Virus record (IMG/VR): IMGVR_UViG_3300042350_004528
Coordinates: 124,001-188,000 of that record
Length of the DNA: 64,000 nt
Strand: one strand, 5' to 3'
The notes beneath the pieces were generated by a model, which did not search any database, was not told where the DNA came from, and worked only from the letters and a program-made list of their open reading frames with translations. Positions 18,601-63,032 of the stretch are shown piece by piece. The position numbers and the translations under genes are program-made. Every line of letters begins with the position of its first letter. Positions within the stretch are counted from its first letter, which is position 1.

Positions 18601-21600
18601 ACCAGAAGTACCAGCAGTTCCACTTGAACCAGAAGTTCCTGATGTTGCTGATATACCTGAAGTACCAGCAGTTCCATTTCTACCCGAGGTTCCTGAAGAA
18701 CCTGATGTTCCACTTGTTGCTGATATACCTGATGTTCCACTTGAACCACTTGTTCCTGATGTTGCAGAAACACCACTTGTACCAGCAGTTCCATTTCTTC
18801 CTGAAGTACCTGAAGATCCACTTGTACCTGATGTTGCGGAAACGCCTGAGGTTCCCGAGGTTCCCGAAGAACCTGATGTACCACTTGTTGCAGAAACACC
18901 TGAAGTTCCGTTTATTCCTGATGTTCCCGATGAACCACTCGTTCCAGCAGTTCCAGAAGTTCCCGAAGATCCACTTGTACCTGATGTTGCAGATACACCT
19001 GAAGTTCCAGCAGTTCCATTTCTACCTGAAGTTCCACTTGAACCTGATGTACCTGATGTGGCAGATACTCCACTTGTTCCTGAAGAACCTGATGTTCCAC
19101 TTGTTGCTGATACACCTGAAGTTCCAGCAGTTCCATTTATTCCTGAGGTTCCTGAAGATCCACTTGTACCTGATGTCGCAGATACCCCACTTGTTCCTGA
19201 TGTACCTGAAGAACCAGAAGTCCCCGATGTCGCAGATACACCTGAAGTTCCAGCAGTTCCATTTCTTCCCGATGTACCTGAAGAACCAGAAGTTCCTGAT
19301 GTTGCAGATACCCCACTTGTTCCTGATGTTCCACTTGAACCTGATGTTCCACTTGTTGCTGATATCCCAGAGGTACCATTTATTCCCGATGTTCCACTTG
19401 AACCTGATGTTCCACTTGTTGCTGATATCCCAGAGGTACCAGCAGTTCCTGAAGAACCACTTGTACCGCTTGTCGCAGACACACCACTTGTTCCAGCAGT
19501 TCCGTTTCTACCTGAAGTTCCTGAAGAACCAGAAGTTCCTGATGTTGCAGATATCCCTGATGTTCCCGAGGTTCCTGAAGAACCTGATGTTCCACTTGTT
19601 GCTGATATCCCAGAGGTACCAGCAGTTCCGTTTATTCCAGAGGTTCCTGAAGAACCTGATGTTCCTGATGTTGCTGACACACCACTTGTTCCCGCAGTTC
19701 CCGAAGATCCACTTGTACCTGATGTTGCAGAAACACCTGAGGTTCCAGCAGTTCCATTTCTACCCGCAGTTCCCGAAGAACCCGATGTTCCTGATGTTGC
19801 AGATATCCCTGATGTTCCCGAGGTTCCTGAAGAACCAGAAGTTCCTGATGTTGCAGAAACACCTGAAGTACCAGCAGTTCCATTTATACCTGAAGTTCCT
19901 GACGATCCACTTGTACCAGAAGTACCAGCAGTTCCTGAAGAACCTGATGTACCACTTGTTGCAGAAACACCTGAGGTTCCAGCAGTTCCATTTCTACCCG
20001 AGGTTCCTGAAGAACCTGATGTACCTGATGTTGCAGACACTCCTGATGTACCAGCAGTTCCCGAAGAACCTGATGTTCCTGATGTCGCAGATACACCTGA
20101 AGTTCCAGCAGTTCCATTTATTCCTGAAGTTCCTGAAGAACCATTTGTTCCTGATGTCGCAGAAACACCACTTGTCCCTGATGTACCTGAAGAACCAGAA
20201 GTTCCTGATGTTGCTGATATTCCTGATGTACCAGCGGTTCCATTTCTACCTGAAGTACCTGAAGAACCACTTGTTCCTGATGTTGCTGAAACTCCCGAAG
20301 TACCAGAAGTTCCAGAGGAACCTGATGTTCCTGAAGTTGCACTTATTCCTGAAGTACCAGCCGTACCGTTTATTCCCGAAGTACCTGACGATCCACTTGT
20401 ACCAGAAGTACCTGATGTTCCGCTCGAACCAGAAGTTCCTGATGTTGCGGATACACCTGAAGTTCCAGCAGTTCCGTTTATTCCAGAGGTTCCTGAAGAA
20501 CCTGATGTTCCTGATGTTGCAGATATTCCACTTGTACCAGCTGTACCTGAAGAACCTGAAGTTCCGCTTGTTGCTGATATCCCTGAAGTCCCAGCAGTTC
20601 CATTTCTACCTGAGGTACCACTTGAACCACTCGTTCCCGATGTAGCGGATACACCACTTGTCCCTGATGTACCTGAAGAACCAGCAGTTCCACTTGTTGC
20701 AGAAACACCTGAAGTTCCAGCAGTTCCATTTATTCCTGAAGTTCCTGAAGAACCTGAAGTTCCTGAAGTTGCACTTATTCCTGAAGTTCCAGCTGTTCCT
20801 GAAGAACCTGATGTTCCTGATGTGGCACTTATTCCTGAAGTTCCAGCAGTTCCATTTCTACCCGAGGTTCCTGAAGATCCAGAAGTACCTGATGTTGCAG
20901 AAACACCTGATGTACCTGAAGTACCTGAAGAACCACTTGTTCCCGATGTTGCAGAAACACCTGATGTACCAGCGGTTCCATTTATTCCTGATGTTCCCGA
21001 TGAACCAGAAGTTCCGCTTGTTGCGGATGTACCTGATGTTCCAGCAGTACCACTTGAACCAGAAGTACCTGATGTTGCAGAAACACCTGATGTACCTGAG
21101 GTTCCATTTCTACCAGCTGTTCCTGAAGAACCCGATGTCCCACTTGTAGCGGATACACCACTTGTTCCAGCTGTACCTGAAGAACCTGATGTACCTGATG
21201 TCGCAGATATACCTGATGTTCCAGCAGTTCCATTTCTACCAGCTGTTCCTGAAGAACCCGATGTCCCACTTGTAGCGGATACTCCACTTGTTCCTGATGT
21301 TCCTGAAGAACCAGAAGTTCCTGATGTTGCTGATGCACCTGAAGTTCCAGCGGTACCATTTATTCCTGAAGTTCCCGATGATCCATTTGTACCAGCCGTA
21401 CCAGAAGTGCCAGAAGATCCACTTGTTCCGCTTGTTGCGGATATACCTGATGTTCCAGCAGTTCCATTTATACCTGAAGTTCCAGAAGAACCAGAAGTTC
21501 CGCTTGTTGCAGATATTCCTGATGTTCCAGCGGTACCATTAATACCTGATGTACCAGCTGTTCCTGAAGAACCAGAAGTTCCGCTTGTTGCAGATATTCC

Positions 21601-24600
21601 TGAAGTCCCAGCAGTTCCGTTTCTACCAGAAGTACCTGAAGAACCAGAAGTACCTGATGTTGCAGAAACACCTGATGTTCCCGAGGTTCCTGAAGAACCA
21701 GAAGTACCTGATGTGGCGGATACACCTGAAGTCCCAGCAGTTCCATTTATTCCTGATGTTCCACTTGAACCTGATGTACCTGATGTCGCAGAAACACCAC
21801 TTGTTCCTGATGTTCCACTTGAACCAGAAGTACCCGATGTCGCAGACACACCTGATGTTGCTGATACCCCCGATGTACCTGATGTTCCGCTCGATCCACT
21901 TGTTCCTGATGTTGCAGAAACACCACTTGTTCCAGCTGTACCTGAAGAACCTGAAGAACCTGATGTTCCTGATGTTGCAGATATTCCACTTGTACCAGCA
22001 GTTCCATTTCTACCTGAGGTACCACTTGAACCACTCGTTCCCGATGTTGCGGATACTCCACTTGTTCCTGATGTTCCCGAAGAACCAGAAGTTCCTGATG
22101 TTGCTGAAACACCTGATGTACCAGAAGTTCCATTTATTCCTGAAGTTCCCGATGAACCACTTGTACCAGCAGTACCTGAGGTTCCTGAAGAACCAGAAGT
22201 ACCTGATGTTGCGGATATTCCTGAAGTTCCAGCAGTTCCATTTATTCCAGCTGTTCCTGAAGAACCATTTGTTCCTGATGTCGCAGATACACCTGAAGTC
22301 CCCGCAGTTCCACTTGAACCAGAAGTTCCCGATGTTGCTGATATCCCTGAAGTTCCAGCAGTTCCGTTTCTTCCTGAGGTTCCTGAAGAGCCCGATGTTC
22401 CTGATGTAGCAGAAACACCACTTGTTCCCGCAGTTCCCGAAGAACCCGATGTTCCTGAGGTTGCTGAAACACCCGATGTTCCAGCTGTACCATTTATTCC
22501 AGATGTTCCTGAAGAACCTGATGTTCCTGAAGTTGCTGATACACCCGATGTTCCACTTGTTCCCGAAGAACCTGATGTTCCTGAGGTTGCTGAAACACCC
22601 GATGTTCCAGCTGTACCATTTATTCCTGAGGTTCCTGAAGAACCTGATGTCCCACTTGTAGCGGACACACCACTTGTTCCCGCAGTTCCTGAAGAACCAG
22701 AAGTACCTGATGTTGCTGAAACACCCGATGTTCCAGCTGTACCATTTATTCCTGAAGTTCCAGAGGAACCTGATGTTCCTGAAGTTGCTGATATTCCTGA
22801 AGTACCAGCTGTTCCTGAAGAACCAGAAGTTCCGCTTGTTGCGGATATTCCTGAAGTTCCAGCAGTTCCGTTTCTTCCTGAGGTTCCTGAAGAACCAGAA
22901 GTACCTGATGTTGCCGATACTCCCGATGTTCCTGAGGTTCCTGAAGAACCTGATGTTCCTGATGTAGCAGAAACACCTGATGTACCAGCTGTACCATTTA
23001 TCCCCGAAGTTCCCGCAGTTCCCGAAGAACCTGATGTTCCTGATGTTGCAGAAACACCACTTGTTCCAGCTGTACCTGAAGAACCTGATGTTCCACTTGT
23101 TGCCGATATTCCTGATGTACCAGAAGTTCCATTTCTTCCTGAAGTACCTGAAGAACCACTTGTTCCTGATGTTGCTGAAACACCACTTGTTCCAGCTGTA
23201 CCTGAAGAACCAGATGTACCTGATGTTGCGGAAACACCTGATGTTCCAGCGGTTCCGTTTATTCCTGATGTTCCACTTGAACCAGAAGTACCTGATGTTG
23301 CAGATACCCCACTTGTACCTGAAGTCCCGCTTGAACCAGCAGTTCCGCTTGTTGCTGATATACCTGAAGTTCCAGCAGTTCCATTTCTACCTGATGTTCC
23401 ACTTGAACCCGATGTACCTGATGTTGCAGATACTCCTGAAGTTCCAGCAGTACCACTTGAACCTGATGTACCTGATGTGGCAGACACACCACTTGTACCA
23501 GCAGTTCCATTTCTTCCTGATGTTCCACTTGAACCTGATGTTCCTGATGTTGCAGACACTCCTGATGTACCTGAGGTTCCTGAAGATCCACTTGTACCTG
23601 ATGTTGCTGATATCCCCGAAGTTCCAGCAGTTCCATTTATTCCTGATGTACCTGAGGTTCCACTTGAACCCGATGTTGCAGACACACCTGATGTGCCTGA
23701 GGTTCCCGAAGAACCTGATGTACCTGATGTCGCAGATATACCTGATGTTCCAGCAGTTCCATTTATTCCTGAAGTACCTGAAGATCCGTTTGTACCTGAT
23801 GTTGCGGAAACACCTGAGGTTCCCGAGGTTCCCGAAGAACCCGATGTTCCTGATGTGGCAGACACACCACTTGTACCAGCAGTTCCATTTCTTCCCGATG
23901 TACCTGAAGTTCCGCTTGAACCAGCAGTACCGCTTGTCGCAGATACTCCACTTGTACCAGCAGTTCCGTTTATTCCTGATGTTCCAGCAGTACCACTTGA
24001 ACCTGATGTACCTGATGTTGCAGACACTCCTGATGTTCCAGCAGTACCATTTATTCCTGAAGTACCCGAAGATCCGTTTGTACCAGCAGTCCCTGAAGTC
24101 CCCGAAGATCCACTTGTACCTGATGTCGCTGATGCCCCTGAAGTTCCAGCGGTTCCGTTTATTCCTGATGTTCCACTTGAACCAGATGTTCCACTTGTTG
24201 CCGATATCCCTGATGTACCAGCGGTTCCATTTCTACCTGAAGTACCACTTGAACCTGATGTACCTGATGTTGCAGAAACACCTGATGTACCTGAAGTTCC
24301 ATTTATCCCTGATGTGCCTGAAGTACCGCTTGAACCTGATGTTCCTGATGTTGCAGACACTCCTGAAGTTCCTGATGTTCCCGAAGAACCAGAAGTTCCT
24401 GATGTTGCAGACACTCCTGAAGTTCCTGATGTTCCATTTATTCCTGATGTTCCACTTGAACCTGATGTACCTGATGTGGCAGATACTCCTGAAGTTCCCG
24501 AAGTACCTGAAGAACCAGATGTACCTGATGTTGCGGAAACACCTGATGTTCCAGCGGTTCCGTTTATTCCTGATGTTCCACTTGAACCAGATGTTCCTGA

Positions 24601-27600
24601 TGTGGCGGATACACCCGAAGTTCCCGAAGTACCTGAAGAACCAGAAGTTCCTGATGTCGCAGATACCCCACTTGTACCAGCGGTTCCATTTATTCCTGAT
24701 GTTCCACTTGAACCTGATGTTCCTGATGTGGCAGATACTCCACTTGTACCAGAGGTACCACTTGAACCCGATGTACCTGATGTTGCAGATACTCCACTTG
24801 TACCAGCAGTTCCGTTTATTCCTGAAGTACCTGAAGATCCACTTGTACCTGATGTTGCTGATATACCTGAAGTTCCAGCAGTTCCATTTCTACCAGCTGT
24901 ACCTGAAGATCCTGATGTTCCACTTGTCGCAGATACCCCACTTGTACCAGCGGTTCCATTTATTCCTGATGTTCCAGAAGAACCTGATGTTCCTGATGTG
25001 GCAGATACACCCGAAGTTCCTGAAGTTCCACTTGAACCCGATGTTCCTGATGTGGCAGACACACCACTTGTACCAGCAGTTCCGTTTATTCCTGATGTTC
25101 CAGCAGTACCACTTGAACCTGATGTACCTGATGTTGCAGACACACCACTTGTTCCAGCAGTTCCATTTCTACCAGCGGTTCCACTTGAACCATTTGTTCC
25201 AGATGTTGCAGATACCCCTGAAGTTCCTGATGTTCCGTTTATTCCCGAAGTTCCTGAAGAACCTGATGTTCCTGATGTTGCGGAAACACCTGAAGTTCCC
25301 GATGTTCCATTTCTACCTGATGTTCCCGAAGAACCTGAGGTTCCTGAAGAACCATTTGTTCCCGATGTTCCACTTATTGCTGATATACCATTTAATCCAT
25401 CAATACCCGATGTACCAGTTGAACCACTTGTTCCTGATGTTGCAGATACACCTGATGTTCCAGCACTCCCACTTCTACCTGATGTTCCCGAAGAACCTGA
25501 GGTTCCTGAAGAACCATTTGTTCCCGATGTTCCACTTATTGCTGATATACCATTTAATCCATCAATACCCGATGTACCAGTTGAACCAGAAGTTCCACTT
25601 GTCGCAGACACTCCTGATGTTCCAGCAGTACCATTTCTTCCTGAGGTTCCCGAAGAACCTGAGGTTCCACTTGTTGCAGATACTCCACTTGAACCTGATG
25701 TACCTGATGTCGCAGATACTCCCGATGTACCAGAGGTACCCGATGTTCCTGAAGAACCAGAAGTTCCAGATGTTGCAGAAACACCTGATGTTCCCGATGT
25801 TCCTGAAGAACCTGATGTTCCTGATGTGGCAGACACACCACTTGTACCAGCAGTTCCATTTATTCCTGATGTTCCCGAAGAACCAGATGTACCTGATGTT
25901 GCCGATATACCTGAAGTTCCAGCGGTACCATTTATTCCAGATGTTCCATTGGAACCACTTGTTCCCGATGTCGCAGACACACCTGAAGTCCCAGCGGTTC
26001 CATTTCTCCCCGATGTTCCACTTGAACCTGATGTTCCACTTGTAGCGGATACTCCCGATGTACCAGCAGTACCGTTTATTCCTGAAGTACCTGAAGAACC
26101 ATTTGTTCCAGATGTGGCAGATACTCCACTTGAACCAGCAGTACCGCTTGTCGCAGATACTCCACTTGTTCCCGAGGTTCCTGAAGACCCAGACGTTCCT
26201 GATGTTGCAGATACACCTGATGTTCCAGCACTCCCACTTCTACCTGATGTTCCCGAAGAACCTGATGTTCCTGATGTCGCAGACACACCTGAAGTTCCAG
26301 AGGTTCCGTTTATTCCCGATGTACCTGAAGAACCAGATGTCCCTGATGTTCCACTTATCGCTGATGTACCAGCAGTACCGTTTATTCCTGAAGTACCTGA
26401 AGAACCATTTGTTCCAGATGTGGCAGACACACCTGAAGTTCCTGATGTTCCATTTATTCCTGATGTACCTGATGAACCACTTGTACCAGCAGTTCCACTT
26501 ATCGCTGATGTACCAGCAGTACCATTTATTCCCGAAGTTCCTGATGACCCAGAAGTTCCTGATGTTGCCGATATTCCCGAAGTTCCTGATGTTCCATTTA
26601 TTCCTGATGTACCTGATGAACCACTTGTTCCTGATGTCGCAGACACACCACTTGTACCAGCAGTTCCATTTGAACCTGATGTTCCTGATGTTGCTGATAT
26701 CCCAGAAGTACCTGATATCCCAGAAGTACCTGATGAACCACTTGTACCAGCAGTTCCATTTCTTCCTGAGGTTCCGCTTGAGCCAGAAGTTCCTGAAGTT
26801 CCACTCTCACCTGAAGTTCCCGAAGAACCTGAAGTTCCTGAAGAACCACTTGTACCGCTTGAACCAGAAGTTCCCGAAGAACCTGAAGTATTCGATTCAC
26901 CTGATGTACCAGCACCACCTGATGTTCCAGCAGTACCACCTGTTCCCGAGGTTCCAGCCTGGGATGTACTTGTTCCAGATGTACCAGCACCACCTGATGT
27001 TCCAGAAGTACCACCTGTTCCCGAGGTTCCAGCCTGGGATGTACTTGTTCCAGATGTACCAGCACCACCTGATGTTCCAGCAGTACCACCTGTTCCCGAG
27101 GTTCCACTTATTGCTGATATACCATTTAATCCATCAATACCCGATGTACCAGTTGAACCAGAAGTTCCTGATGTTGCTGATATCCCCGAAGTTCCAGCAG
27201 TTCCATTTCTACCTGATGTTCCACTTGAACCAGAAGTTCCTGATGTTGCTGATATCCCTGATGTACCAGAGGTACCCGATGTTCCTGAAGAACCATTTGT
27301 TCCGCTTGTCGCCGATACCCCTGATGTTCCCGAAGAACCCGAAGTTCCAGCAGTTCCTGAAGAACCATTTGTTCCCGATGTCGCAGATATCCCACTTGTT
27401 CCCGATGTTCCATTTATTCCTGATGTACCTGAAGATCCACTTGAACCTGATGTACCTGATGTGGCAGATACACCTGATGTTCCAGCGGTTCCATTTATTC
27501 CTGAAGTCCCCGAAGATCCACTTGTTCCAGCAGTACCTGATGTACCCGAAGAACCCGATGTTCCCGAAGATCCGCTAGATCCTGAAGTCCCCGAACTTCC

Positions 27601-30600
27601 GCTTGAGCCAGAAGTACCTGATGTTCCTGAACTCCCCGAACTTCCGCTTGAGCCAGAAGTACCTGATGTTCCTGATGTTGCGGAAACACCTGATGTACCA
27701 GCGGTTCCATTTCTTCCTGAAGTTCCGCTTGAACCAGAAGTTCCAGATGTTGCAGAAACACCTGAAGTTCCATTTAATCCTGATGTTCCCGAAGAACCTG
27801 ATGTTCCCGAAGAACCTGATGTTCCCGAAGAACCTGATGTACCAGTAGTTCCTGATGTACCTGAAGAACCTGAGGTTCCAGAAGAACCTGATGTTCCCGA
27901 AGAACCTGACGTACCTGATGTCGCAGATATTCCAGAAGTACCTGAAGTTCCAGATGATCCACTTTCACCCGATGTTCCCGAGGTTCCAGACGTTGCGGAA
28001 CCACCACTCTCACCCGCTAGTCCATTAACACCCGAAGTACCTGAAGAACCTGATGTTCCTGATGTTGCGGAAATGCCTGAAGTACCACTTGTACCGTTTG
28101 AGCCTGATGTTCCAGAAGTACCTGAAGACCCAGACGTTCCCGAAGAACCACTTGTCCCATTTGTACCCGATTCACCTGAAGTACCTGAAGACCCAGACGT
28201 TCCTGAAGTTCCATTTGTTCCTGATTTACCTGAAGACCCAGACGTTCCTGAAGTTCCACTTTCGCCAGAAGTTCCTGAAGTTCCATTTGTTCCTGATTCA
28301 CCTGATGTTCCCGAAGAACCACTTGTACCACTTGTTCCAGAAGAACCATTTGTACCATTTGTTCCAGATGTTCCACTTTCACCAGAAGTTCCCGAAGTTC
28401 CACTTTCACCCGAAGTTCCTGAAGAACCTGATGTACCTGATGTTGCAGATATCCCTGATGTTCCCGAAGAACCATTTGTACCACTTTCACCTGAACTTCC
28501 ACTTTCACCCGAACTTCCACTTGTGCCAGAAGTTCCCGAACTTCCACTTGAACCTGATGTACCTGAACTTCCACTTTCACCCGAAGTACCGTTTGTACCA
28601 CCCTCACCCGAAGTTCCATTTGTTCCTGAAGTTCCCGAAGTTCCACTTATTGCTGATATACCATTTAATCCATCAATACCCGATGTACCAGTTGAACCAG
28701 AAGTTCCTGATGTTGCTGATATACCTGAAGTTCCAGCAGTTCCATTTATTCCCGATGTTCCACTTGAACCAGAAGTTCCCGAAGAACCATTTGTACCAGA
28801 AGTTCCCGAAGAACCATTTGTACCACTTTCACCTGAAGTACCGTTTGTACCCGACTCACCAGATGTCCCTGATGTTCCCGATGTACCTGAAGAACCAGAT
28901 GTTCCTGATGTTCCTGAAGAACCATTTGTACCGCTCTCACCTGAACTTCCGCTTGAACCAGAAGAACCTGATGTTCCACTTGAGCCAGAAGAACCTGATG
29001 TTCCACTTGAGCCAAATGTTCCTGAGGTTCCAGAAGAACCATTTGTACCACTCTCACCTGAACTTCCACTCTCACCCGAAGTTCCTGAGGTTCCAGAAGA
29101 ACCTGATGTTCCACTTGAACCAGAAGTACCCGATGTTCCCGAAGAACCATTTGTACCACTTTCACCTGAAGTACCACTTTCACCCGAACTTCCACTTGAA
29201 CCAGAAGTACCTGATGTTCCTGAAGAACCAGAAGTACCTGATGTTCCTGAAGTACCGTTTGTACCACTTTCACCTGAAGTACCACTTTCACCCGATGTTC
29301 CTGAGGTTCCTGATGTACCTGAGGAACCACTTGTTCCAGAAGTTCCCGATGTTCCCGAAGAACCATTTGTACCACTTTCACCTGAAGTACCACTTTCACC
29401 TGAAGAACCCGAAGTTCCTGATGTACCTGAGGAACCACTTGTACCTGAAGTTCCAGATGATCCACTTTCACCCGATGTGCCTGAAGTTCCAGAAGTTGCG
29501 GAACCACCACTCTCACCCGCTAGTCCATTAACACCCGAAGTTCCTGAAGAACCAGAAGTTCCCGAAGAACCCGATGTCCCTGAAGTTGCTGAAAAACCTG
29601 AAGTACCGTTTGTACCCGACTCACCCGAAGTTCCCGAAGTTCCCGAAGAACCTGATGTTCCCGATGTTCCCGAAGAACCCGATGTCCCTGAAGTTGCTGA
29701 AAAACCTGAAGTACCATTTGTGCCCGACTCACCCGAAGTTCCTGAAGTTCCTGAAGAACCCGATGTCCCAGAAGTTCCTGAAGAACCCGATGTTCCTGAA
29801 GTTCCACTTTCACCTGAAGTACCGTTTGTACCCGACTCACCCGATGTTCCCGATGTTCCCGATGTACCTGAGGAACCACTTGTTCCCGAAGAACCCGAAG
29901 AACCTGATGTTCCTGAAGTTCCATTTGAACCTGATGTTCCTGAAGTTCCACTTTCACCCGAAGTTCCACTTGAGCCAGAAGTACCTGAGGAACCACTTGT
30001 TCCCGAAGAACCTGAAGAACCTGATGTACCTGATGTTCCTGAAGAACCATTTGTACCACTCTCACCTGAAGTACCACTCTCACCCGAAGAACCTGATGTT
30101 CCTGATGTTCCAGATGATCCACTTGTACCTGATGTTCCTGATGTTCCCGAAGAACCATTTGTCCCTGACTCACCTGAAGTACCGTTTGTTCCCGACTCAC
30201 CAGATGTCCCCGATGTCCCCGATGTACCTGATGAACCAGAAGTTCCCGAAGAACCAGATGTCCCTGATGTTCCGTTTGTTCCAGATTCACCATTTGTACC
30301 ATTTTCACCAGACGTTCCTGAAGTTCCTGAAGTTCCGCTTGTTCCTGATGTTCCTGAAGAACCAGAAGTACCTGATGTTCCGTTTGTTCCAGATTCACCA
30401 TTTGTACCATTTTCACCAGACGTTCCTGAAGTTCCTGAAGTTCCGCTTGTTCCTGATGTTCCTGAAGAACCAGACGTTCCTGAAGTTCCTGAAGTTCCGC
30501 TTGTTCCAGATTCACCATTTGTACCATTTTCACCCGAAGTTCCTGAAGAACCAGAAGTTCCCGAAGAACCAGAAGTTCCCGAAGTTCCACTTGTACCCGA

Positions 30601-31557
30601 TGTACCAGACGTACCGTTTGTCCCACTTTCACCCGATGTTCCTGATGTTCCTGTTGTCCCCGATGTTCCTGATGTGCCAGATGTGCTTGGCAACACCATA
30701 TATTTGTCAATTCTTTTTGCTACGATTATAACAGAGGGCGCCGCTGGATAATTAACCCCAGCCCCTAAAGCTGTTATTTGTACATGTTGATTTGTGGATA
30801 AAAATACAAACTCAACACAATCATTAGCTTGTAAATTAAATTGATATGCAACAAATGGTAATTGATATGCGCCATTTCCGCTTAATGTTATAGTTGATGT
30901 TGTCCTGGGCTCGTCATTGCCATTAATTCTTGCCCAAATTATAATATCAGTACCGTTTGCATTTGATGCGGCTTCAATTTGAGCTGAATATCCTATTTCA
31001 TAAACACCAGCATTATCTACGGTAATTTGTGAATTATTTTGTACACTAATGCCATTTGCAATTTCGGTTGTATTATATTCCCAAACGGTTGGTATACTTG
31101 AACCACTGACTACTTGTGTGGTTGAATCACTAAACGACCCATAATAATTATCTCCAGTCCACGAAGTACCAGATGAACCTGCTGTTCCCGAAGTACCAGT
31201 AGTTCCTGATGTACCTGAAGAACCAGAAGTTCCCGACTCACCAGATGTCCCCGATGTACCTGAGTAACCAGATGTTCCTGAGGTACTAGCGGCGGAATAT
31301 GTGAATTGACCCGTTAGCGGATCAAATGTTACGACATATTGCGGATTTAATTCTTGAGTTAATTCCTGATTAACCCAATTACTACCATTATAAACTAAAA
31401 TACTACCAGCTGTTGCGCCAGTTGTTATTATTACATCAGTTAGGTCATCCAGACCTAAGTTCTCAATTGCATTTTTTAGATTATCAAAATTCGCGTCAAG
31501 TTCGCCGAATGTTAAAGGTCTACCTAGTGCGCATCTTAAATATATTGTAACCGCCAT
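15607..31557 (-). CDS. Giant (5316 aa) Gly-X-Y Ser/Thr-rich collagen-like fibre protein with C1q/BclA-like globular domains
   Basis: N-terminus [21 protein letters not shown] resembles phage fibre attachment segments. Beta-sandwich at about aa 135-285 (YYGSF...[11 protein letters not shown]). About 4700 aa of period-3 [19 protein letters not shown]-terminal beta domain (TTVQFDT..YD...RFVIQ). TATTTAT upstream. Confidence 0.85.
16660..30690 (-). repeat. About 14-kb period-9-nt coding repeat (Gly-X-Y triplets) with synonymous variation
   Basis: Plus strand is built of units such as GTTCCTGAT, GTTCCTGAA, GAACCAGAA, GTACCTGAT. Confidence 0.95.
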
Positions 31558-55788: not shown

Positions 55789-55864
55789 GATTCAGAAGAA
55801 AATACAATAACAATAATAATAAAATAGTAATTGGAAATCCTGTCATTTGACAGGATTTTTTTTT
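55785..55864 (+). promoter_or_regulatory. Putative Asn-sensing attenuator: leader peptide MRFRRKYNNNNNKIVIGNPVI* (55785-55850) overlapping a terminator (55835-55864)
   Basis: Five consecutive Asn codons plus a sixth in the stem. Hairpin AAATCCTGTC-ATTT-GACAGGATTT followed by a T run, 28 nt before the AsnRS-like gene. Confidence 0.7.
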
Positions 55865-55892
55865 GCGCCAAAAATTAAACAAAAAAAAACAA

Positions 55893-56708
55893 ATGAAAAA
55901 CACAGAAACTTACAATGAACTCGTGCAGAAGATGCGCAAATTCTTTCTTGAAAGAGGATTCAAGGAAGTGCCAACACAATCAAGATTATCAATTCTCGCG
56001 GCTTGTGAGAACCCACACTCGGTTAAAACGTTCGAGTATGGTGGTTTGATCTGGCCGTTGCCACAGACTGGACAGATGTGGCTTGAGTATGAGTTGTTAA
56101 AGAATCCAGAATGGAATGGCGTATTTTGCGTATCAACATCGTACAGAGAAGAAAAGAACCCAATCCCAGGAAGGCATGAGCTTATCTTCCCAATGTTTGA
56201 GTTTGAGTCAAAGGGAACCATGGAGGATTTAATCAAAATGGAAGGCGACCTTTTGGCTTATCTTGGATTTGGTGATGAGATGGTTCAAGTTAAATACGAT
56301 GATGTGTGTGAGGAATACGGTGGGGTACCAATTCTTGAGGATGAGCATGAATCCAGAATGTGGAATGAAAAGGGTAATGTTGTTTCATTACAACACTTCC
56401 CAATCAGAACAAATCCATTCTGGAACATGAAACACAATAACGATGGGATTTTCAACAAGGTTGATGTGATTCTTTACGGACAGGAAACAATTGGATCCGC
56501 CGAGAGAAGCTGCGATGTTGAGAAGATGAGAGAAATGTTTTATGCTATTGAGAACGGTGCGTATTGCGCCAAGTTGTTCGAGTTATTCGGAAAAGAAAGG
56601 GTTGAGGCTGAGCTTGAGGAATTCTTGAAGCACAATTTCTTCCCAAGATATGGTGGTGGAATCGGGATGACCAGAATGGCCAGAGCGTATGAGTTATTAA
56701 AGAAATAA
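55893..56708 (+). CDS. Class II aaRS (Asn/Asp) catalytic-domain-only protein, probably an asparagine synthetase of the AsnRS-derived type
   Basis: Motif 1 (MRKFFLERGFKEV), motif 2 (SYREE...GRHELIFPMFEFE), ETIGSAER, motif 3 (GGGIGMTRM). No anticodon-binding domain. Confidence 0.8.
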   Translation: MKNTETYNELVQKMRKFFLERGFKEVPTQSRLSILAACENPHSVKTFEYGGLIWPLPQTGQMWLEYELLKNPEWNGVFCVSTSYREEKNPIPGRHELIFPMFEFESKGTMEDLIKMEGDLLAYLGFGDEMVQVKYDDVCEEYGGVPILEDEHESRMWNEKGNVVSLQHFPIRTNPFWNMKHNNDGIFNKVDVILYGQETIGSAERSCDVEKMREMFYAIENGAYCAKLFELFGKERVEAELEEFLKHNFFPRYGGGIGMTRMARAYELLKK

Positions 56709-57415: not shown

Positions 57416-57724
57416 ATGGTAAAACTTTTTGAGAGAATACATATCCCATTGTGGATCGCAAAGGATATGTTCTGGATGTTGGGTCAGGGCGAACTCTCAT
57501 TGGCTTTCGCGATACCAACCATAATATTATCAACAATACTCATAACAGTAAAACAGGGGTCGGAAAGGTGGCTCGAGATGATGATGGCCTTTTGGTTATC
57601 AGCCAATACCTTATGGATGTCCCACGAGCTTTTTCATACGGACACAAAAGAAATTGCATTAACCTGTTTTTTATTTGGCATTTTAACAATTCCAATCTAT
57701 TTATTAAAGATAAAAGAAGAATAA
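57416..57724 (+). CDS. Small multi-pass membrane protein
   Basis: HIPLWIAKDMFWM..., about four hydrophobic segments. Start at 57410 or 57416. Confidence 0.65.
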   Translation: MVKLFERIHIPLWIAKDMFWMLGQGELSLAFAIPTIILSTILITVKQGSERWLEMMMAFWLSANTLWMSHELFHTDTKEIALTCFLFGILTIPIYLLKIKEE

Positions 57725-57732
57725 AACTAGTT

Positions 57733-59307
57733 ATGAAACTAACTGAGGAAATAAAGAAAATGCAATCCATGATGGGCATTATGTCCGAGGATGTGAAAAT
57801 ATACGCAAACGGTGTTGGATCTGAGGTGTTTAATGATAACGAACATTACGGAAAGGTTGATGATATTAATTTAAATGACACCATAGCAAATGAACCGTTT
57901 AAGGATATGGAATACATGGATAAAAGTTCCAATGTCGATGATATGGTTCAAGCCTTGAAATCTGGTGAAGAGCTGCCACCAATACTTGTTATTCAACACC
58001 CCTTCGACCAATCAAAATATTTGGTTGTCGATGGAAACCATAGAAGATACGCATATGACCGCGCAGGTGCTGATAAGATTCCAGCCGTTGTGATTAAACC
58101 AGAGGATGTTTTGTTAATGCAATCCGATTGGGGTGATCCAGAGGAAAAGGCGATCAGATTATCTGATGTTATATCCGATCCAGAGTTGTTTGCTCGAGAA
58201 AACACAAGAATGTTAATTGACAAGTATTTTGTTAAACCAGACGGATCACATGAGTTCGAATTGAATGAAAATTTATATGAGGAAAAGAAAAAAGCCGATC
58301 GTTGTTTAAGAATAGCGAGAAGAAAATACAGCAAACCATCAGCATATAGATCTGGTGCAATCGTTCAATGCAGAAGAGGAAAGATATGGAGAGGTTTGAA
58401 GGAAGAGGAGATCCAAATGATTGACAACGCACCAGAGGAAATGCAAGGTTTGATCGCCAAGGCTCACGATGCTTTGACGTGGAAGAGGGGTCGAAAAGAA
58501 TATGCTCCAGATTTTAATGAACTTCAAACATGGGTGGATGCTTATTTGGAGACTGACGGTGGAATGCATGAAGCGAAGAAAACCGATTTCTCAAAGGAGA
58601 AAAAGAGCGGACTTCACGGATGGTTTTCAAGAAGAGGTGGTGGCGGAAGCAAAGGATGGGTTGATTGCAACACATGCAGAAAAGTTGACGGAAAGAAAAA
58701 ATGCAAGGCTTGTGGAAGACAAAAGGGTGAGGTGAGAGCCAAGTACCCATCATGCAGACCAACACCAGCATCATGCGGAACACCAGGAAAGGGAAAATCT
58801 TGGGGCAAGACAAAGGAAGAGGGTTACAGCTTGAATGAAGCCAAGGAGATGAAGAGAGTTGCTTTGCTTTTCATTGTGATTGACAACGAAGCGTTGTTGT
58901 TCAAGAGAAGCGAAGACGAAACAACAAATCCAGGAAAATACGGAATGCTTGGTGGTGGAATTGAAAAGAATGAAACGCCAGAGGAAGCAATCGTGAGAGA
59001 GATCAGAGAAGAAGCTGGTGTTGAGTTGAAATCATTCAAACCACTGAAGAAATATATTTACAACAACGAGTGTGAATTAAACGTATTCTACACAAACGAA
59101 TTTCCAATTGATGATGTTGTGCTTGACAAGAACGAACACACATCGTACAAATATTTCACGATGGAACAATTGATAGATATGGATCCAAAGGATATGATTG
59201 GTTCCAACAAAGAAATCGCGAAGGATTACAACGAGATCGCAAACAAGAAAAAGAAATTGGAAGAAGAGATAGAGAGAATAAAAGCTACGATGAAGATTCT
59301 TATTTAA
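57733..59307 (+). CDS. Tagged polyprotein-like fusion: ParB/Srx domain, two Cys-rich basic modules, NUDIX hydrolase
   Basis: LPPILV...VDGNHRR (ParB). PSAYRSGAIVQC and GWVDCNTC...CGR...YPSCRP modules. Nudix box GGGIEKNETPEEAIVREIREEAG. Tags at both termini. Start at 57733. Confidence 0.8.
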   Translation: MKLTEEIKKMQSMMGIMSEDVKIYANGVGSEVFNDNEHYGKVDDINLNDTIANEPFKDMEYMDKSSNVDDMVQALKSGEELPPILVIQHPFDQSKYLVVDGNHRRYAYDRAGADKIPAVVIKPEDVLLMQSDWGDPEEKAIRLSDVISDPELFARENTRMLIDKYFVKPDGSHEFELNENLYEEKKKADRCLRIARRKYSKPSAYRSGAIVQCRRGKIWRGLKEEEIQMIDNAPEEMQGLIAKAHDALTWKRGRKEYAPDFNELQTWVDAYLETDGGMHEAKKTDFSKEKKSGLHGWFSRRGGGGSKGWVDCNTCRKVDGKKKCKACGRQKGEVRAKYPSCRPTPASCGTPGKGKSWGKTKEEGYSLNEAKEMKRVALLFIVIDNEALLFKRSEDETTNPGKYGMLGGGIEKNETPEEAIVREIREEAGVELKSFKPLKKYIYNNECELNVFYTNEFPIDDVVLDKNEHTSYKYFTMEQLIDMDPKDMIGSNKEIAKDYNEIANKKKKLEEEIERIKATMKILI

Positions 59308-60856: not shown

Positions 60857-61600
60857 CCCCCAGAAATTTTTTGAGAAAACGATTTGAAAATAAAACAAGG
60901 GTCACTTTTTAGTTTATGGTTTTTTTATTACTTTTGTTTTATGATATTACAGAACACAAATACCGAGGATAAACTTTCATATTGCAAGGAAGCATCGGAT
61001 GTACAAGAACCAGCGTTTGTTGAGTTCATAAACGGGTTGAATGGATTGGTTACATTGAAGATTAATCCAGATAAGGAATTTGATCCATACACACACGATT
61101 TGGTTGTGAATGGAGCCCCAGGAGATCTTAAGACACAAGACACACCATTCTTTAAATCTGAGACGCTTTACGATATCGATCCTCAGTGGGCCATCACATA
61201 TAACCATAAGGATTACCTGAGGTACAAGAAGAAGTACACAAGCGTTGGAAAGAACGTTGTATTGTTCTTTGACGTGACAAGAAAGGATGAGGTTAAATAC
61301 GATGTGAAGACATTCCCCATGAGGGCCATCTTTTACACAAAGGCATCAGACATTGAAAAGATGATTGAGAACAAAGAGGTTCCCCTTCATGAGTACCTTA
61401 ACAGAAAGAATGACGACCAGGGAAACGCAAAGAGCAGTTATGTGATCGATGTCAGACGCTTTAACATGATATACTATTCAGGAAAAGGATTCAGGTTGAA
61501 AATCTGAGAAAAAAAAATTCCCCAGAAATTTTTTGAAAAAATGATTCCCCACAGAACAAGGGTCGATTTTCCAGAAAAAAGTACCCCCAGAAATTTTTTT
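60857..61600 (+). repeat. CCCCAGAAATTTTTT repeats (60857, 61520, 61585); first two extend to ...AACAAGGGTC
   Basis: Direct observation. The first two copies bracket the 60941 gene. Confidence 0.8.
60941..61507 (+). CDS. Hypothetical protein, possibly PD-(D/E)xK-like
   Basis: ATG at 60941 after TACTTTTG (-7 box). E...DLVV...DLKT pattern is only weakly suggestive. Confidence 0.55.
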   Translation: MILQNTNTEDKLSYCKEASDVQEPAFVEFINGLNGLVTLKINPDKEFDPYTHDLVVNGAPGDLKTQDTPFFKSETLYDIDPQWAITYNHKDYLRYKKKYTSVGKNVVLFFDVTRKDEVKYDVKTFPMRAIFYTKASDIEKMIENKEVPLHEYLNRKNDDQGNAKSSYVIDVRRFNMIYYSGKGFRLKI

Positions 61601-61627
61601 CAGAAATACTTCATTTAGATATTTGAG

Positions 61628-61696
61628 CCCCCCTTTGCCCCCCATAAACGGGGGGTAGGGAGGGGGATACGGGAGGGGGGAGGGTGTACCACCCCC
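61628..61696 (+). other. C-tract/G-tract element with G-quadruplex potential
   Basis: C6-TTTG-C6-ATAAAC-G6-TA-G3-A-G5-ATAC-G3-A-G6-A-G3, extreme for an AT-rich genome. Confidence 0.7.
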
Positions 61697-61740
61697 TATA
61701 CTGCTATTTTCTTTTAATGTGCAAGTTTATATAAAACAAA

Positions 61741-61767
61741 GTTATCCACACTTGTGATGTGGATAAC
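61741..61767. promoter_or_regulatory. Inverted pair of DnaA-box consensus sequences (also a possible terminator hairpin)
   Basis: TTATCCACA at 61742-61750 and TGTGGATAA at 61758-61766. Confidence 0.5.
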
Positions 61768-61791: not shown

Positions 61792-62313
61792 TTATCCGAA
61801 GATAACCTTTTCCCCACACTTGATATTCTCAATACCCTCAACCTTGATAGTACGGATAACAATATCATTATCCAAACCTTGATTGATTGCCTTGCTTGGC
61901 TTTTGTTTGAACTGCTTGATAACCTCAACTTGTTCAGCGTTTGCCTCAACCCCGTCAACGAAGTATTTAAGCGTTTTAGAAGTGTTACAAGCGAACTTTA
62001 AGTACTCACACGATAGGTCGCTTTTCTTTGCTACGATAGAGCCGTTAAAGCCGTCATTTACGGGCGTAAACCAATTTTCTTTGGCTACGAAGTCAGCCTC
62101 TTTACCCTCACGAATACGGGCGTTATTCACCATATTTTGATAGTTAGCGTTTAACAACATATTGTAGTCAACTAACTTGGTGATAACGGCACTACGCAAA
62201 GGGTTGCCCGTCTTTAACATTTTTTGTTCAACCACTGCTAATACTTGGGCGAACTTTGCACTGCCTCCGTCATTGATAAGGCTTGCGATTACTTGTGATT
62301 TTTTGTTTTGCAT
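61792..62313 (-). CDS. Early-type hypothetical protein
   Basis: 173 aa behind promoter TTTG-N20-TACATTTG (62370-62339). Confidence 0.75.
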   Translation of the reverse strand: MQNKKSQVIASLINDGGSAKFAQVLAVVEQKMLKTGNPLRSAVITKLVDYNMLLNANYQNMVNNARIREGKEADFVAKENWFTPVNDGFNGSIVAKKSDLSCEYLKFACNTSKTLKYFVDGVEANAEQVEVIKQFKQKPSKAINQGLDNDIVIRTIKVEGIENIKCGEKVIFG

Positions 62314-62412
62314 ATCTGTTTGTTTTGATTTGATGATACAAATGTAGGTGTAATTTTTTTAACCCGCAAATTTTAACGCAAATTTTTTTATCTTTTTTTT
62401 TGTTTAACTTTT

Positions 62413-62484
62413 CGGGCAAAACATTAAACACAAAAAGTATCGTGTAGGTTGGAGTATACTCTCCCGACTTGTTCAGCCCGCCCG
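62413..62484 (-). ncRNA. Candidate structured small RNA (72 nt, four-way junction)
   Basis: Directly downstream of promoter 62503-62534 with no ATG-initiated ORF. Terminal stem CGGGCG/UGCCCG enclosing three hairpins. Confidence 0.5.
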
Positions 62485-62691
62485 TTGTCTTTAACAACAA
62501 TACAAAGGTAAATGAAATAAATTTAACTTGCAAACTTTAACACAAATTTCTTTGTTTTTTTTTTGACTCATTTTAAGCCGTTTTAAGACACTCTAACAAC
62601 TAAACCATACGAACATATACCTTTGTTCCTTTCGTTTAATCTGAGCATAAAAAAAGGGGCGATTTGCCCCTTTCTTTGTTTCTTGTTTACC

Positions 62692-62925
62692 TTACCAAAC
62701 CAAAACCGCTGGGTCTTCCGTTTGGGCGATTTGTTCCGCCTTTGTTTTTAACTCGGTCATTTGAGCGATTAAAACCTCATAGGTCGGTCTTTGATTTGTT
62801 TTGTAACCCAAAATTCGTTTGGCACAATCCCTCGCTGAAATTCGGCTCATTTTCATTCCTGTTTTTTTCTCGAACTCTAAGCCGCGAAGGCATACTACGA
62901 TTTGAAAAAGTGATGTTGTTGTCAT
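62692..62925 (-). CDS. Early-type small protein (MTTTSLFQ...)
   Basis: ATG 21 nt downstream of the -7 box. Confidence 0.7.
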   Translation of the reverse strand: MTTTSLFQIVVCLRGLEFEKKTGMKMSRISARDCAKRILGYKTNQRPTYEVLIAQMTELKTKAEQIAQTEDPAVLVW

Positions 62926-63032
62926 TGTTTGTTTGTTTTGATAGTTCAAAGATAAACGAAATAAATTTAACTTGCAAATTTTAACATAAAAAAAAGGGGA
63001 ATTTCTTCCCCTTTCTTTGTTTCTTGTTTACC

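What the first reader, a model, noticed from the sequence alone, without database searches (positions are those of the whole stretch)
62413..62484. tRNA-sized cloverleaf-like ncRNA under its own early-type promoter
Seen: minus strand CGGGCGGGCUGAACAAGUCGGGAGAGUAUACUCCAACCUACACGAUACUUUUUGUGUUUAAUGUUUUGCCCG. It has a closing stem plus arms GGCU/AGUC, GGAG/CUCC and ACACGA/UUGUGU. In the other cassettes this slot holds a protein gene. There is no T-loop consensus or CCA. Inference: a small RNA made at once on infection, possibly a tRNA mimic or a decoy for a defence nuclease.
Basis: partly seen in the sequence, partly recalled or inferred. Interest (0 to 1): 0.62.

Follow-up and report, generated by a model that had tools for sequence, protein, structure and literature searches.

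The report
Early phage small RNA, not tRNA-like

Summary
The sequence, coordinates, promoter and missing ORF are all real. The window lies in a 298.8-kb T4-related jumbo phage from lake water, which fits the 'moraphage' lineage of Bacteroidota phages. About 50 near-identical early promoters cluster at genome 186-218 kb. Forty-six of them are followed within 27 nt by an ATG ORF of at least 20 aa. This slot has none.

ARAGORN and Rfam find no tRNA or known RNA family. Relatives carry homologous elements at the same place, and the same genome holds a second, independently terminated copy. The conserved parts are a hairpin starting at the predicted transcription start, GGGCGGG, one small hairpin with compensatory changes in all four pairs, and a nearly invariant core GAGUAUACUCCAACCUAC. 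Most relatives end in a stem plus U-run.

They pair in 55% of cells, against about 44% background.

My best reading is a new family of early, phage-encoded small RNAs acting in trans by base-pairing or protein binding. The window's copy has lost the canonical terminator, so it may partly read through into the 173-aa gene. I found no expression data and no target. The tRNA-mimic idea is unsupported.

The parts
62503..62534 (-). Early promoter P2: -33 TTTG at 62534-62531 and -7 box TACCTTTG at 62510-62503.
   Evidence: Pattern scans. It is one of about 50 near-identical promoters, TTTGCA(A/C)(G/A)TTAAATTTATTTC..TAnnTTTG, at genome 186-218 kb. The same -7 context, CATTTACCTTTGTATTGT, precedes the paralogous RNA.
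62484..62498 (-). 5'-terminal 'leader' hairpin GUUGU-UAAAG-ACAAC, starting at the predicted transcription start (about 62498).
   Evidence: The start is inferred from cassettes whose ATG lies 4 nt after the -7 box, which look like leaderless mRNAs. Every homologue has a hairpin here with a different sequence. Pair 10-25 of alignment A3 shows U-A, C-G and A-U. L037 versus L044 shows UGA/UCG changed to UGG/CCG.
62477..62483 (-). G-rich segment GGGCGGG. In the other RNA types it is the 5' strand of the family's closing stem.
   Evidence: The 8-mer GGGCGGGC occurs only twice in the 299-kb genome (0.16 expected per strand). Both copies lie 19-20 nt after an early -7 box in ORF-less slots. GGG is invariant in all homologues. 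In types C-G it pairs with (C/U)UGCCC in 85% of cells.
62466..62478 (-).
   Evidence: All 4 pairs change on both sides among 9-10 homologues: CGGU/ACCG, GACU/AGUC, GACA/UGUC and CGUUGC/GUAACG. No shuffle of 500 reaches the observed covariation score.
62444..62465 (-). Nearly invariant core GGGAGAGUAUACUCCAACCUAC.
   Evidence: Columns are invariant in alignments A3 and A5. The last 22 nt are 77-95% identical across contigs whose neighbouring gene is 62-88% identical at nucleotide level. It can fold as GGAG/CUCC (87% of cells paired, no covariation). In relatives it can instead form the 5' arm and loop of a terminator hairpin, AGAGUA/UACCUU.
62413..62443 (-).
   Evidence: It is present only in the window's phage, L030 and L031, and partly in L272. 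Elsewhere it is replaced by CCUUAUAUUUUUUU. The GTTTAAT..GCCCG..TTAAAC piece lies inverted, downstream of the terminator, in L036, L050 and L067. The terminator scan finds nothing here.
62371..62412 (-). A-rich spacer between the RNA and the next promoter.
   Evidence: Read directly from the sequence. The tail GTTAAACAAAAAAAAAG is shared with the paralogous RNA, where a real terminator follows it.
62339..62370 (-). Promoter P3 of the 173-aa gene.
   Evidence: The ATG lies 25 nt downstream.
61792..62313 (-). 173-aa gene of unknown function, often but not always next to RNAs of this family.
   Evidence: No Pfam or PHROG hit. 80 unnamed homologues. AlphaFold2 model with pLDDT 93. The only structural hits are weak small-barrel matches (Sm, Hfq, WYL, YaeO) at Z up to 7.4, plus an ESM Atlas cluster partly annotated WYL_2. 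Its 55%-identical paralogue lies tail-to-tail with the paralogous RNA.

Best explanation
The element is the window's copy of an undescribed family of small non-coding RNAs, about 65-90 nt long. They are encoded in the early-gene arrays of T4-related jumbo phages of freshwater Bacteroidota. A canonical member is a complete transcription unit made of:
- a host-type early promoter;
- a hairpin that begins at the predicted +1, which I infer protects the 5' end;
- GGGCGGG;
- a small covarying hairpin;
- a type-specific, nearly invariant 16-22-nt motif (here GAGUAUACUCCAACCUAC);
- a stem plus U-run terminator.

I infer that host RNA polymerase makes it as soon as the DNA enters the cell. I also infer that it acts in trans through the invariant motif, either by pairing with a host RNA or by binding a protein. 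The neighbouring 173-aa protein is one candidate partner.

In this phage the 3' end has been rearranged and the canonical terminator is lost. Transcripts therefore probably end inefficiently at the AU-rich hairpin and U-rich stretch near 62437-62418, and some read on into the 173-aa gene.

What is shown: the promoter, the absence of an ORF, homology, covariation and sequence constraint. What is inferred: transcription, the RNA ends, the early timing and the trans action.
For: - Promoter array and missing ORF.
- A paralogue at genome 196,035-196,150 shares the -7 box context, GGGCGGGC at the same distance, and the tail. It has its own terminator and stands apart from any downstream gene.
- Homologues lie upstream, downstream or convergent to 173-aa gene homologues in many contigs. 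Others precede unrelated genes: a 215-aa gene in L050/L067/L136, DUF932 in L264 and L302, and a 120-aa gene in L287 behind a different promoter type.
- A covariance model built from type A finds types D and E at E = 1e-6 to 1e-9.
- Covariation: hairpin 1 changes on both sides in 4 of 4 pairs, and the leader stem covaries too. No shuffle of 500 reaches the score, and the slid controls pair in 16-47% of cells against 86% observed.
- The closing stem of types C-G pairs in 85% of cells, with G-C to G-U changes.
- The core is 92-97% identical where the adjacent gene is 62-65% identical.
- A 1-nt indel in a 99%-related contig argues against coding.
- No known RNA family or tRNA matches.
Against: - There is no expression evidence. 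The only metatranscriptome contigs found cover the upstream 77-aa gene and not this slot, and such libraries rarely capture small RNAs.
- This copy has no recognisable terminator.
- Folding energies are only mildly better than shuffles: z = -2.2 for 72 nt and -1.4 for 127 nt.
- No complementary target of 12 nt or more exists in the phage genome.
- The complement of the core occurs at the chance level in 301 Flavobacteriia genomes.
- The covariation rests on only 9-10 related sequences, and relatedness can inflate the shuffle statistics.
- The type-A closing stem is weak, pairing in 62% of cells.
- High core identity next to a diverged gene could also reflect recent exchange of the module.
Confidence: 0.55

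Rival explanations
1. Cis-acting leader. P2 and P3 are tandem promoters for the 173-aa gene, and the structured segment is just the 5' UTR or an attenuator of the longer transcript.
For: This copy has no consensus terminator, and only 132 nt separate the P2 -7 box from P3. Several relatives keep two tandem promoters with only a short, unstructured spacer (L039 and L266).
Against: Most homologues end in a stem plus U-run before the next promoter. The paralogue is convergent to its neighbouring gene, so it cannot be that gene's leader. Family members also precede unrelated genes.
Confidence: 0.17
2. tRNA mimic, or decoy for a tRNA-directed defence nuclease.
For: The size is about 72 nt and the single-sequence minimum-free-energy fold is multi-branched. 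The phage invests heavily in tRNAs, with 27 genes. Some other types have a 7-bp G-rich terminal stem.
Against: ARAGORN finds nothing here. Rfam gives no tRNA, tmRNA or tRNA-like hit even at E up to 10. The closing stem and third arm are not conserved. There is no T-loop, D-loop, anticodon arm or CCA. The 5' end carries an extra hairpin instead of a free acceptor end.
Confidence: 0.05
3. Partner RNA of the adjacent 173-aa protein: a ribonucleoprotein, or a type-III-toxin-antitoxin-like RNA-protein pair.
For: Both RNAs of this genome sit next to the two paralogues of the 173-aa gene. About 11 of 17 distinct homologue loci have a family RNA within about 1.5 kb, by my count. The protein model gives weak matches to nucleic-acid-binding small barrels (Sm, Hfq, WYL). 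The layout of RNA, terminator and a roughly 170-aa gene resembles ToxIN, as I recall it.
Against: The Z scores of 5-7.4 are below the level the tool calls meaningful. RNA type does not track the protein clade: type A sits beside proteins of 61-100% identity and type D beside proteins of 82-83%. The RNA is not a tandem repeat. No ToxN or AbiQ family is hit. Some homologue loci lack the RNA, and some RNAs lack the gene.
Confidence: 0.12
4. Decaying remnant of a cassette, or a DNA-level element such as a recombination hot spot or an origin-associated transcript that primes replication.
For: The locus is mosaic. The 3' part is rearranged and a 28-bp piece is inverted between relatives. DnaA-box hairpins and a conserved G/C-tract region lie just downstream of the 173-aa gene.
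Against: Compensatory changes preserve the stems. The core is far more conserved than the neighbouring coding sequence in L271 and L272. Cumulative GC skew shows no turning point here.
Confidence: 0.1

Closest known systems
tRNA and tRNA-like structures (tmRNA tRNA-like domain, viral tRNA-like structures)
   Same: Length of about 72 nt. The single-sequence fold has a closing stem and three arms.
   Different: It fails ARAGORN and all Rfam tRNA-clan models. It has no T-loop, D-loop, anticodon arm or CCA. Two of the four helices are not conserved in homologues. An extra 5' hairpin precedes the supposed acceptor end.
Trans-acting bacterial and phage small RNAs built as 5' hairpin, conserved single-stranded seed and intrinsic terminator (for example the Bacteroides sRNAs GibS and MasB, or prophage sRNAs such as DicF; cited from memory)
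   Same: The element has its own strong promoter. It is 65-90 nt long with a hairpin at the 5' end, a short invariant motif flanked by covarying stems, and a U-run terminator in most members.
   Different: It is encoded by a lytic-type jumbo phage of Bacteroidota. No target or chaperone is known. It has diversified into at least five sequence types and occurs in more than one copy per genome. The window's copy lacks the terminator.
Small stable RNAs of phage T4 (species 1 and 2, also called RNA C and D; cited from memory)
   Same: They are small stable RNAs of unknown function in a T4-related phage.
   Different: The T4 species lie in the tRNA cluster and are processed from its precursor. Here the RNA lies about 50 kb from the nearest tRNA gene and 76 kb from the main cluster. 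It sits in the early cassette array and has its own promoter.
Type III toxin-antitoxin RNAs (ToxI, and the pseudo-ToxI of phages; cited from memory)
   Same: An RNA gene lies directly upstream of a gene for a protein of about 170 aa, separated in relatives by a terminator.
   Different: There are no tandem repeats. The protein shows no similarity to ToxN, AbiQ or CptN by sequence or fold. The RNA also occurs without the protein gene.

Membership tests
tRNA / tRNA-like RNA | Recognised by tRNA detectors and covariance models (cloverleaf with D, anticodon and T arms). | tested here: not met
   ARAGORN finds 0 genes in the window but 27 elsewhere in the genome. Rfam gives no tRNA-clan match at gathering score or at E up to 10.
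tRNA / tRNA-like RNA | Acceptor-type closing stem conserved among homologues. | tested here: not met
   The closing stem CGGGC/GCCCG pairs in 55% of cells against 43-45% in slid controls. It is present only in the closest relatives.
tRNA / tRNA-like RNA | T-loop consensus and a 3' CCA or discriminator end. | tested here: not met
   Neither is present in the sequence.
Any described RNA family (Rfam 15) | Match at or near the family's gathering score. | tested here: not met
   No gathering-level hit in the window or in the 36-kb early region. At E-value thresholds of 10 and 5, nothing credible falls on the element or on six homologues.
Trans-acting small RNA (5' hairpin, seed, intrinsic terminator) | Own promoter and no ORF. 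| tested here: met
   A frameshifting 1-nt indel in a near-identical relative argues against coding.
Trans-acting small RNA (5' hairpin, seed, intrinsic terminator) | Intrinsic terminator that defines a discrete 3' end. | tested here: inconclusive
   None is found in the window's copy. A stem plus U-run is present in the paralogue and in most homologues.
Trans-acting small RNA (5' hairpin, seed, intrinsic terminator) | Conserved unpaired motif complementary to a target RNA. | tested here: inconclusive
   An invariant core exists. No target is found in the phage genome or in 301 Flavobacteriia genomes. The host is unknown.
Trans-acting small RNA (5' hairpin, seed, intrinsic terminator) | A discrete transcript is detected. 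| not testable with these tools
   Only assembled metatranscriptome contigs were available, and none lies on the slot.
Type III toxin-antitoxin RNA | Tandem direct repeats of about 34-36 nt upstream of a ToxN/AbiQ-type toxin gene. | tested here: not met
   No tandem repeat in 62371-62500. The 173-aa protein has no ToxN or AbiQ hit by Pfam, PHROGs or Foldseek against the PDB.
RNA anti-CRISPR (solitary repeat mimic) | Sequence and structure similarity to the host's CRISPR repeat. | not testable with these tools
   The host is unknown. A scan of 185,579 species genomes for the exact 16-nt core gave only chance hits and two misbinned phage contigs.

The most novel reading that the evidence does not exclude
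These RNAs form a diversified family of phage-made riboregulators or decoys, with at least five seed types. They would work together with the co-located 173-aa small-barrel (Sm/WYL-like) protein. That would amount to a phage-borne RNA-chaperone-plus-sRNA system deployed in the first minutes of infection, in Bacteroidota hosts, which lack Hfq. The different seed types would be aimed at different host RNAs or at RNA-guided or RNA-cleaving defences.
Probability: 0.1. Interest if true: 0.78.

Novelty: new member of a known kind. Interest (0 to 1): 0.45.

Why it matters
Small RNAs made by virulent phages are little explored, and in Bacteroidota phages hardly at all. Bacteroidota lack Hfq and ProQ, so the way a phage sRNA would work there is an open question.

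This family is short, strongly conserved and present in more than one copy per genome. It has diversified into several sequence types and is placed under the strongest early promoters. That makes it a tractable candidate for host take-over or counter-defence RNA in an abundant freshwater phage lineage.

For annotation, the result shows that 'empty' early cassettes in these jumbo phages are RNA genes rather than gaps. It also removes a tempting but wrong tRNA-mimic label.

Tried and rejected
- **tRNA or tmRNA:** ARAGORN and Rfam were negative.
- **Known RNA families:** nothing in the wider early region or on the homologues.
- **Close DNA or protein relatives in GenBank phages:** none for the locus or for the 173-aa protein. 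The major capsid protein is only 33-34% identical to uncultured huge phages and about 27% to T4-like Vibrio phages.
- **Small ORF:** rejected. The only ATG ORF is 6 codons, and a near-identical relative has a 1-nt indel.
- **Paralogues by BLAST within the genome:** none beyond A-rich matches. The paralogue was found through the shared GGGCGGGC motif and promoter context instead.
- **Loose promoter+GGGCGGG pattern in metagenomes:** mostly chance hits, with a handful of true members.
- **Type D core pattern in viral contigs:** 88 loci, almost all chance hits in coding sequence.
- **Host mimicry or target:** the exact 16-nt core in 185,579 species genomes gave chance hits plus two misbinned phage contigs. 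Its complement in 301 Flavobacteriia genomes was at the control level. No complement of 12 nt or more exists in the phage genome. A resemblance to the 3' end of 16S rRNA, noticed by eye, was not pursued because it was weak.
- **Expression:** the metatranscriptome contigs lie only on the 77-aa gene, so they say nothing about this slot.
- **173-aa protein:** Pfam, PHROGs and Foldseek against the PDB gave nothing. BFVD and the ESM Atlas gave only uncharacterised phage proteins. The VIA wide search gave small-barrel matches below the meaningful level. The 215-aa gene behind type D RNAs is not a homologue.
- **Replication origin:** cumulative GC skew gives no signal at this locus.
- **Three-way junction for type A:** an alternative with closing stem GGGnn/nnCCU pairs in only 62% of cells and stays undecided.

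Full report
**1. Context**

The window is bases 124,001-188,000 of a single 298,833-bp virus record with 34% G+C. The record encodes a portal protein, a gp23-type major capsid protein, a Lon-like protease and a helicase. It also carries 27 tRNA genes at 238-281 kb.

The capsid protein is only 33-34% identical to uncultured huge phages and about 27% identical to T4-like Vibrio phages. The same DNA is 99-100% covered in 14 lake-water metagenome runs. Size, habitat, T4 affinity and a class-II lysyl-tRNA-synthetase-like gene fit the 'moraphage' lineage of Bacteroidota jumbo phages. That lineage is described in PMC12619734, a paper in which a search for the term 'non-coding' found nothing.

Promoters are of the Bacteroidetes type: TTTG, about 20 nt, then TAnnTTTG. 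This consensus is from my own knowledge of Bacteroides promoters.

**2. The observation**

The quoted sequence is correct. It lies behind promoter P2 at 62534-62503. P2 is one of about 50 near-identical promoters packed into genome 186-218 kb.

Forty-six of the 50 are followed within 4-27 nt by an ATG ORF of at least 20 aa. Nine have the ATG just 4 nt after the -7 box. These look like leaderless mRNAs, which places the transcription start five bases after the box.

For P2 that gives a start at about 62498. This is the first base of a perfect 5-bp hairpin, GUUGU-UAAAG-ACAAC. No ORF follows; the longest ATG ORF has 6 codons. After 132 nt comes the next promoter, P3, which serves the 173-aa gene at 62313-61792.

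Two further early promoters in the genome also lack an ORF: 'slot B' at genome 189,927 (minus strand) and 'slot C' at 196,034 (plus strand). A fourth promoter drives the tRNA cluster.

**3. Not a tRNA and not a known RNA**

ARAGORN finds nothing in the window. Rfam finds nothing at gathering scores in the window or in the 36-kb early region. It also finds nothing credible at E up to 10 on the element or at E up to 5 on six homologues.

The 72-nt piece does fold as drawn: -22 kcal/mol with z = -2.19. With its natural flanks the z-score drops to -1.36.

**4. A paralogue in the same genome**

Slot C (L001:10035-10150) shares several features with the finding:
- the same -7 context, CATTTACCTTTGTATTGT;
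- the 8-mer GGGCGGGC at the same distance from the box, which occurs only twice in the genome against 0.16 expected per strand;
- the tail GTTAAAYAAAAAAAAAG.

Slot C then ends in a clean terminator, GGGGATTGCTCCCCTTTT. It lies tail-to-tail with a 55%-identical paralogue of the 173-aa gene. It is therefore a free-standing RNA gene.

**5. Relatives**

Searching with the 173-aa protein and with DNA patterns gave many contigs. Homologous RNA elements lie immediately behind an early promoter in all cases examined. They fall into sequence types.

- **Type A** (like the window): L030, L031, L271, L272, two copies in L264, L036 downstream, L287 and L302.
- **Type C** (like slot C): L010, L072 and L263.
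- **Types D and E:** L036 upstream, L050, L067, L136, L221, L037 and L044.
- **Two further forms:** L056 and L032-35.

A covariance model built from nine type-A sequences recovers types D and E at E = 1e-6 to 1e-9. The types are therefore homologous. In the window's own genome the model finds only the finding itself at a credible score (E = 4e-21); the one other match is at chance level (E = 0.09).

All types share a common plan: a hairpin at the start, (A/C)GGGCGG, a small hairpin, a type-specific conserved motif, and a 3' strand (C/U)UGCCC or UACCUU followed by a U-run.

**6. What is conserved and what is not**

On an unbiased MAFFT alignment of nine type-A sequences:
- Hairpin 1 (GGCU/AGUC in the window) changes on both sides in all four pairs.
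- The leader stem also covaries.
- 86% of cells pair, against 16-47% when the partners are slid.
- No shuffle of 500 reaches the observed covariation score.

The core GAGUA(U/G)ACUCC(A/G)ACCU(A/G)C hardly varies. In L271 and L272 the RNA core is 92-97% identical to the window's, while the adjacent gene is 62-65% identical at nucleotide level.

In most type-A relatives the RNA ends right after ACCUAC with CCUUAUAUUUUUUU.

The window's 3' part includes a short piece, GTTTAAT..GCCCG..TTAAAC. The same piece sits inverted, downstream of the terminator, in L036, L050 and L067. The 'cloverleaf' is thus a lineage-specific by-product of a rearrangement.

Two alternative foldings of the core are both compatible with the data, and neither is proven: GGAG/CUCC, or a terminator hairpin AGAGUA/UACCUU. 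In types C-G the long closing stem pairs in 85% of cells with wobble-consistent changes. In type A it is weak, at 62%.

**7. Is it just a leader?**

The window's copy has no recognisable terminator, so read-through into the 173-aa gene is likely to some degree. Three facts argue against a gene-specific leader at the family level:
- The paralogue is convergent to its neighbouring gene.
- Most homologues terminate before the next promoter.
- Members precede unrelated genes: a 215-aa protein that is not a homologue, DUF932 genes, and a 120-aa gene behind a different promoter type.

**8. Link to the 173-aa protein**

By my count, about 11 of 17 distinct homologue loci carry a family RNA within about 1.5 kb. 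Both RNA copies in this genome sit beside the two paralogues.

The protein has no Pfam or PHROG family. It models confidently, with pLDDT 93. It matches nothing solved by Foldseek and only uncharacterised phage proteins in BFVD.

A search independent of Foldseek lists small barrels at Z 5-7.4: YaeO, WYL domains, and Hfq and Sm proteins. The tool itself rates that range as not significant. One ESM Atlas cluster is partly annotated WYL_2.

RNA type does not follow the protein clade. I treat a partnership as a lead only.

**9. Function**

No target or mimicry signal was found:
- No complement of 12 nt or more to the conserved motifs exists in the phage genome.
- The exact core occurs in cellular genomes only by chance, apart from two misbinned phage contigs that are further family members.
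- Its complement occurs at the control level in 301 Flavobacteriia genomes.

Metatranscriptome contigs from two freshwater studies cover only the upstream 77-aa gene. They are uninformative for a small RNA.

The most economical mechanism is a promoter-proximal, 5'-protected small RNA made by the host polymerase at once on infection. It would act in trans through its invariant motif. Whether it pairs with RNA or titrates a protein cannot be decided here.

**10. Verdict**

This is a real, conserved RNA element and a member of a new family of a known kind, the phage-encoded small RNA. The cloverleaf and tRNA-mimic reading is not supported.

Noticed in passing
Outside the window: genome 196,035-196,150 (+), which is L001:10035-10150: A paralogous small RNA gene ('slot C', type C) with its own early promoter and terminator. 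It lies tail-to-tail with a 55%-identical paralogue of the 173-aa gene (L001 10678-10181, minus strand).
   Followed up: yes
Outside the window: genome about 189,927-189,760 (-), which is L001 about 3927-3760: A third ORF-less early cassette ('slot B') of about 165 nt. It has a long 5' hairpin whose loop holds CCCGCCCC, and its own terminator. The sequence type differs from the others. Its fold is no better than shuffles (z = +0.3).
   Followed up: partly
window 61480-61720 (-): A conserved non-coding region just downstream of the 173-aa gene. It contains long C- and G-tracts (GGGGGTGGTACACCCTCCCCCCTCCCGTATCCCCCTCCC...GGGGGGCAAAGGGGGG). These are followed by repeated units such as AAAAAATTTCTGGGG..TTTTTT. 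The same arrangement follows the homologous gene in L031, L037, L264, L266, L269, L271 and L272.
   Followed up: partly
window 61741-61767: A perfect inverted pair of DnaA-box sequences, TTATCCACA and TGTGGATAA, forms the terminator-like hairpin after the 173-aa gene. TGTGGATAAC recurs at the equivalent place in relatives. The genome has 8 such 9-mers in all.
   Followed up: partly
window 62418-62445 (-), compared with L036, L050 and L067: A roughly 28-bp piece flanked by the short inverted repeats GTTTAA and TTAAAC lies in opposite orientation in different relatives.
   Followed up: partly
window 62540-62640 (-): A conserved non-coding stretch ahead of P2, ..AAAGGTAT..GTATGG..TTAAAACGGCTTAAAATGA. 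In relatives (L266, L269, L271, L272) it recurs downstream of the 173-aa homologue, ahead of the G/C-tract region.
   Followed up: no
window 62681-62934: Contigs from three freshwater metatranscriptome runs (two studies) lie on the 77-aa early gene at 62692-62925. Two of them carry 5 substitutions. This shows that the gene or a close relative is present in RNA libraries.
   Followed up: partly
window 15607-31557 (-) and 16412-30751 (+): A giant 5,316-aa ORF has a 4,779-aa ORF open on the opposite strand. This suggests a highly repetitive or compositionally biased giant gene.
   Followed up: no
window 55863-56708 (+) and 57451-59307 (+): A 281-aa protein consisting only of a class-II aminoacyl-tRNA-synthetase core (Pfam tRNA-synt_2; phrog_29758). 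Nearby is a 618-aa protein with a NUDIX domain and a sub-threshold match to the ParB N-terminal domain.
   Followed up: no
genome-wide early array, for example genome 190,349, 191,320, 194,965 and 195,205 (-): Nine early cassettes have their ATG only 4 nt after the -7 box. They are probably leaderless mRNAs. I used them to place the transcription start.
   Followed up: partly
L263:6900-7075: In a 187-kb relative, a type-A RNA on the plus strand and a type-C RNA on the minus strand are convergent. Their 3' ends overlap, so the two RNAs would be partly complementary to each other.
   Followed up: no
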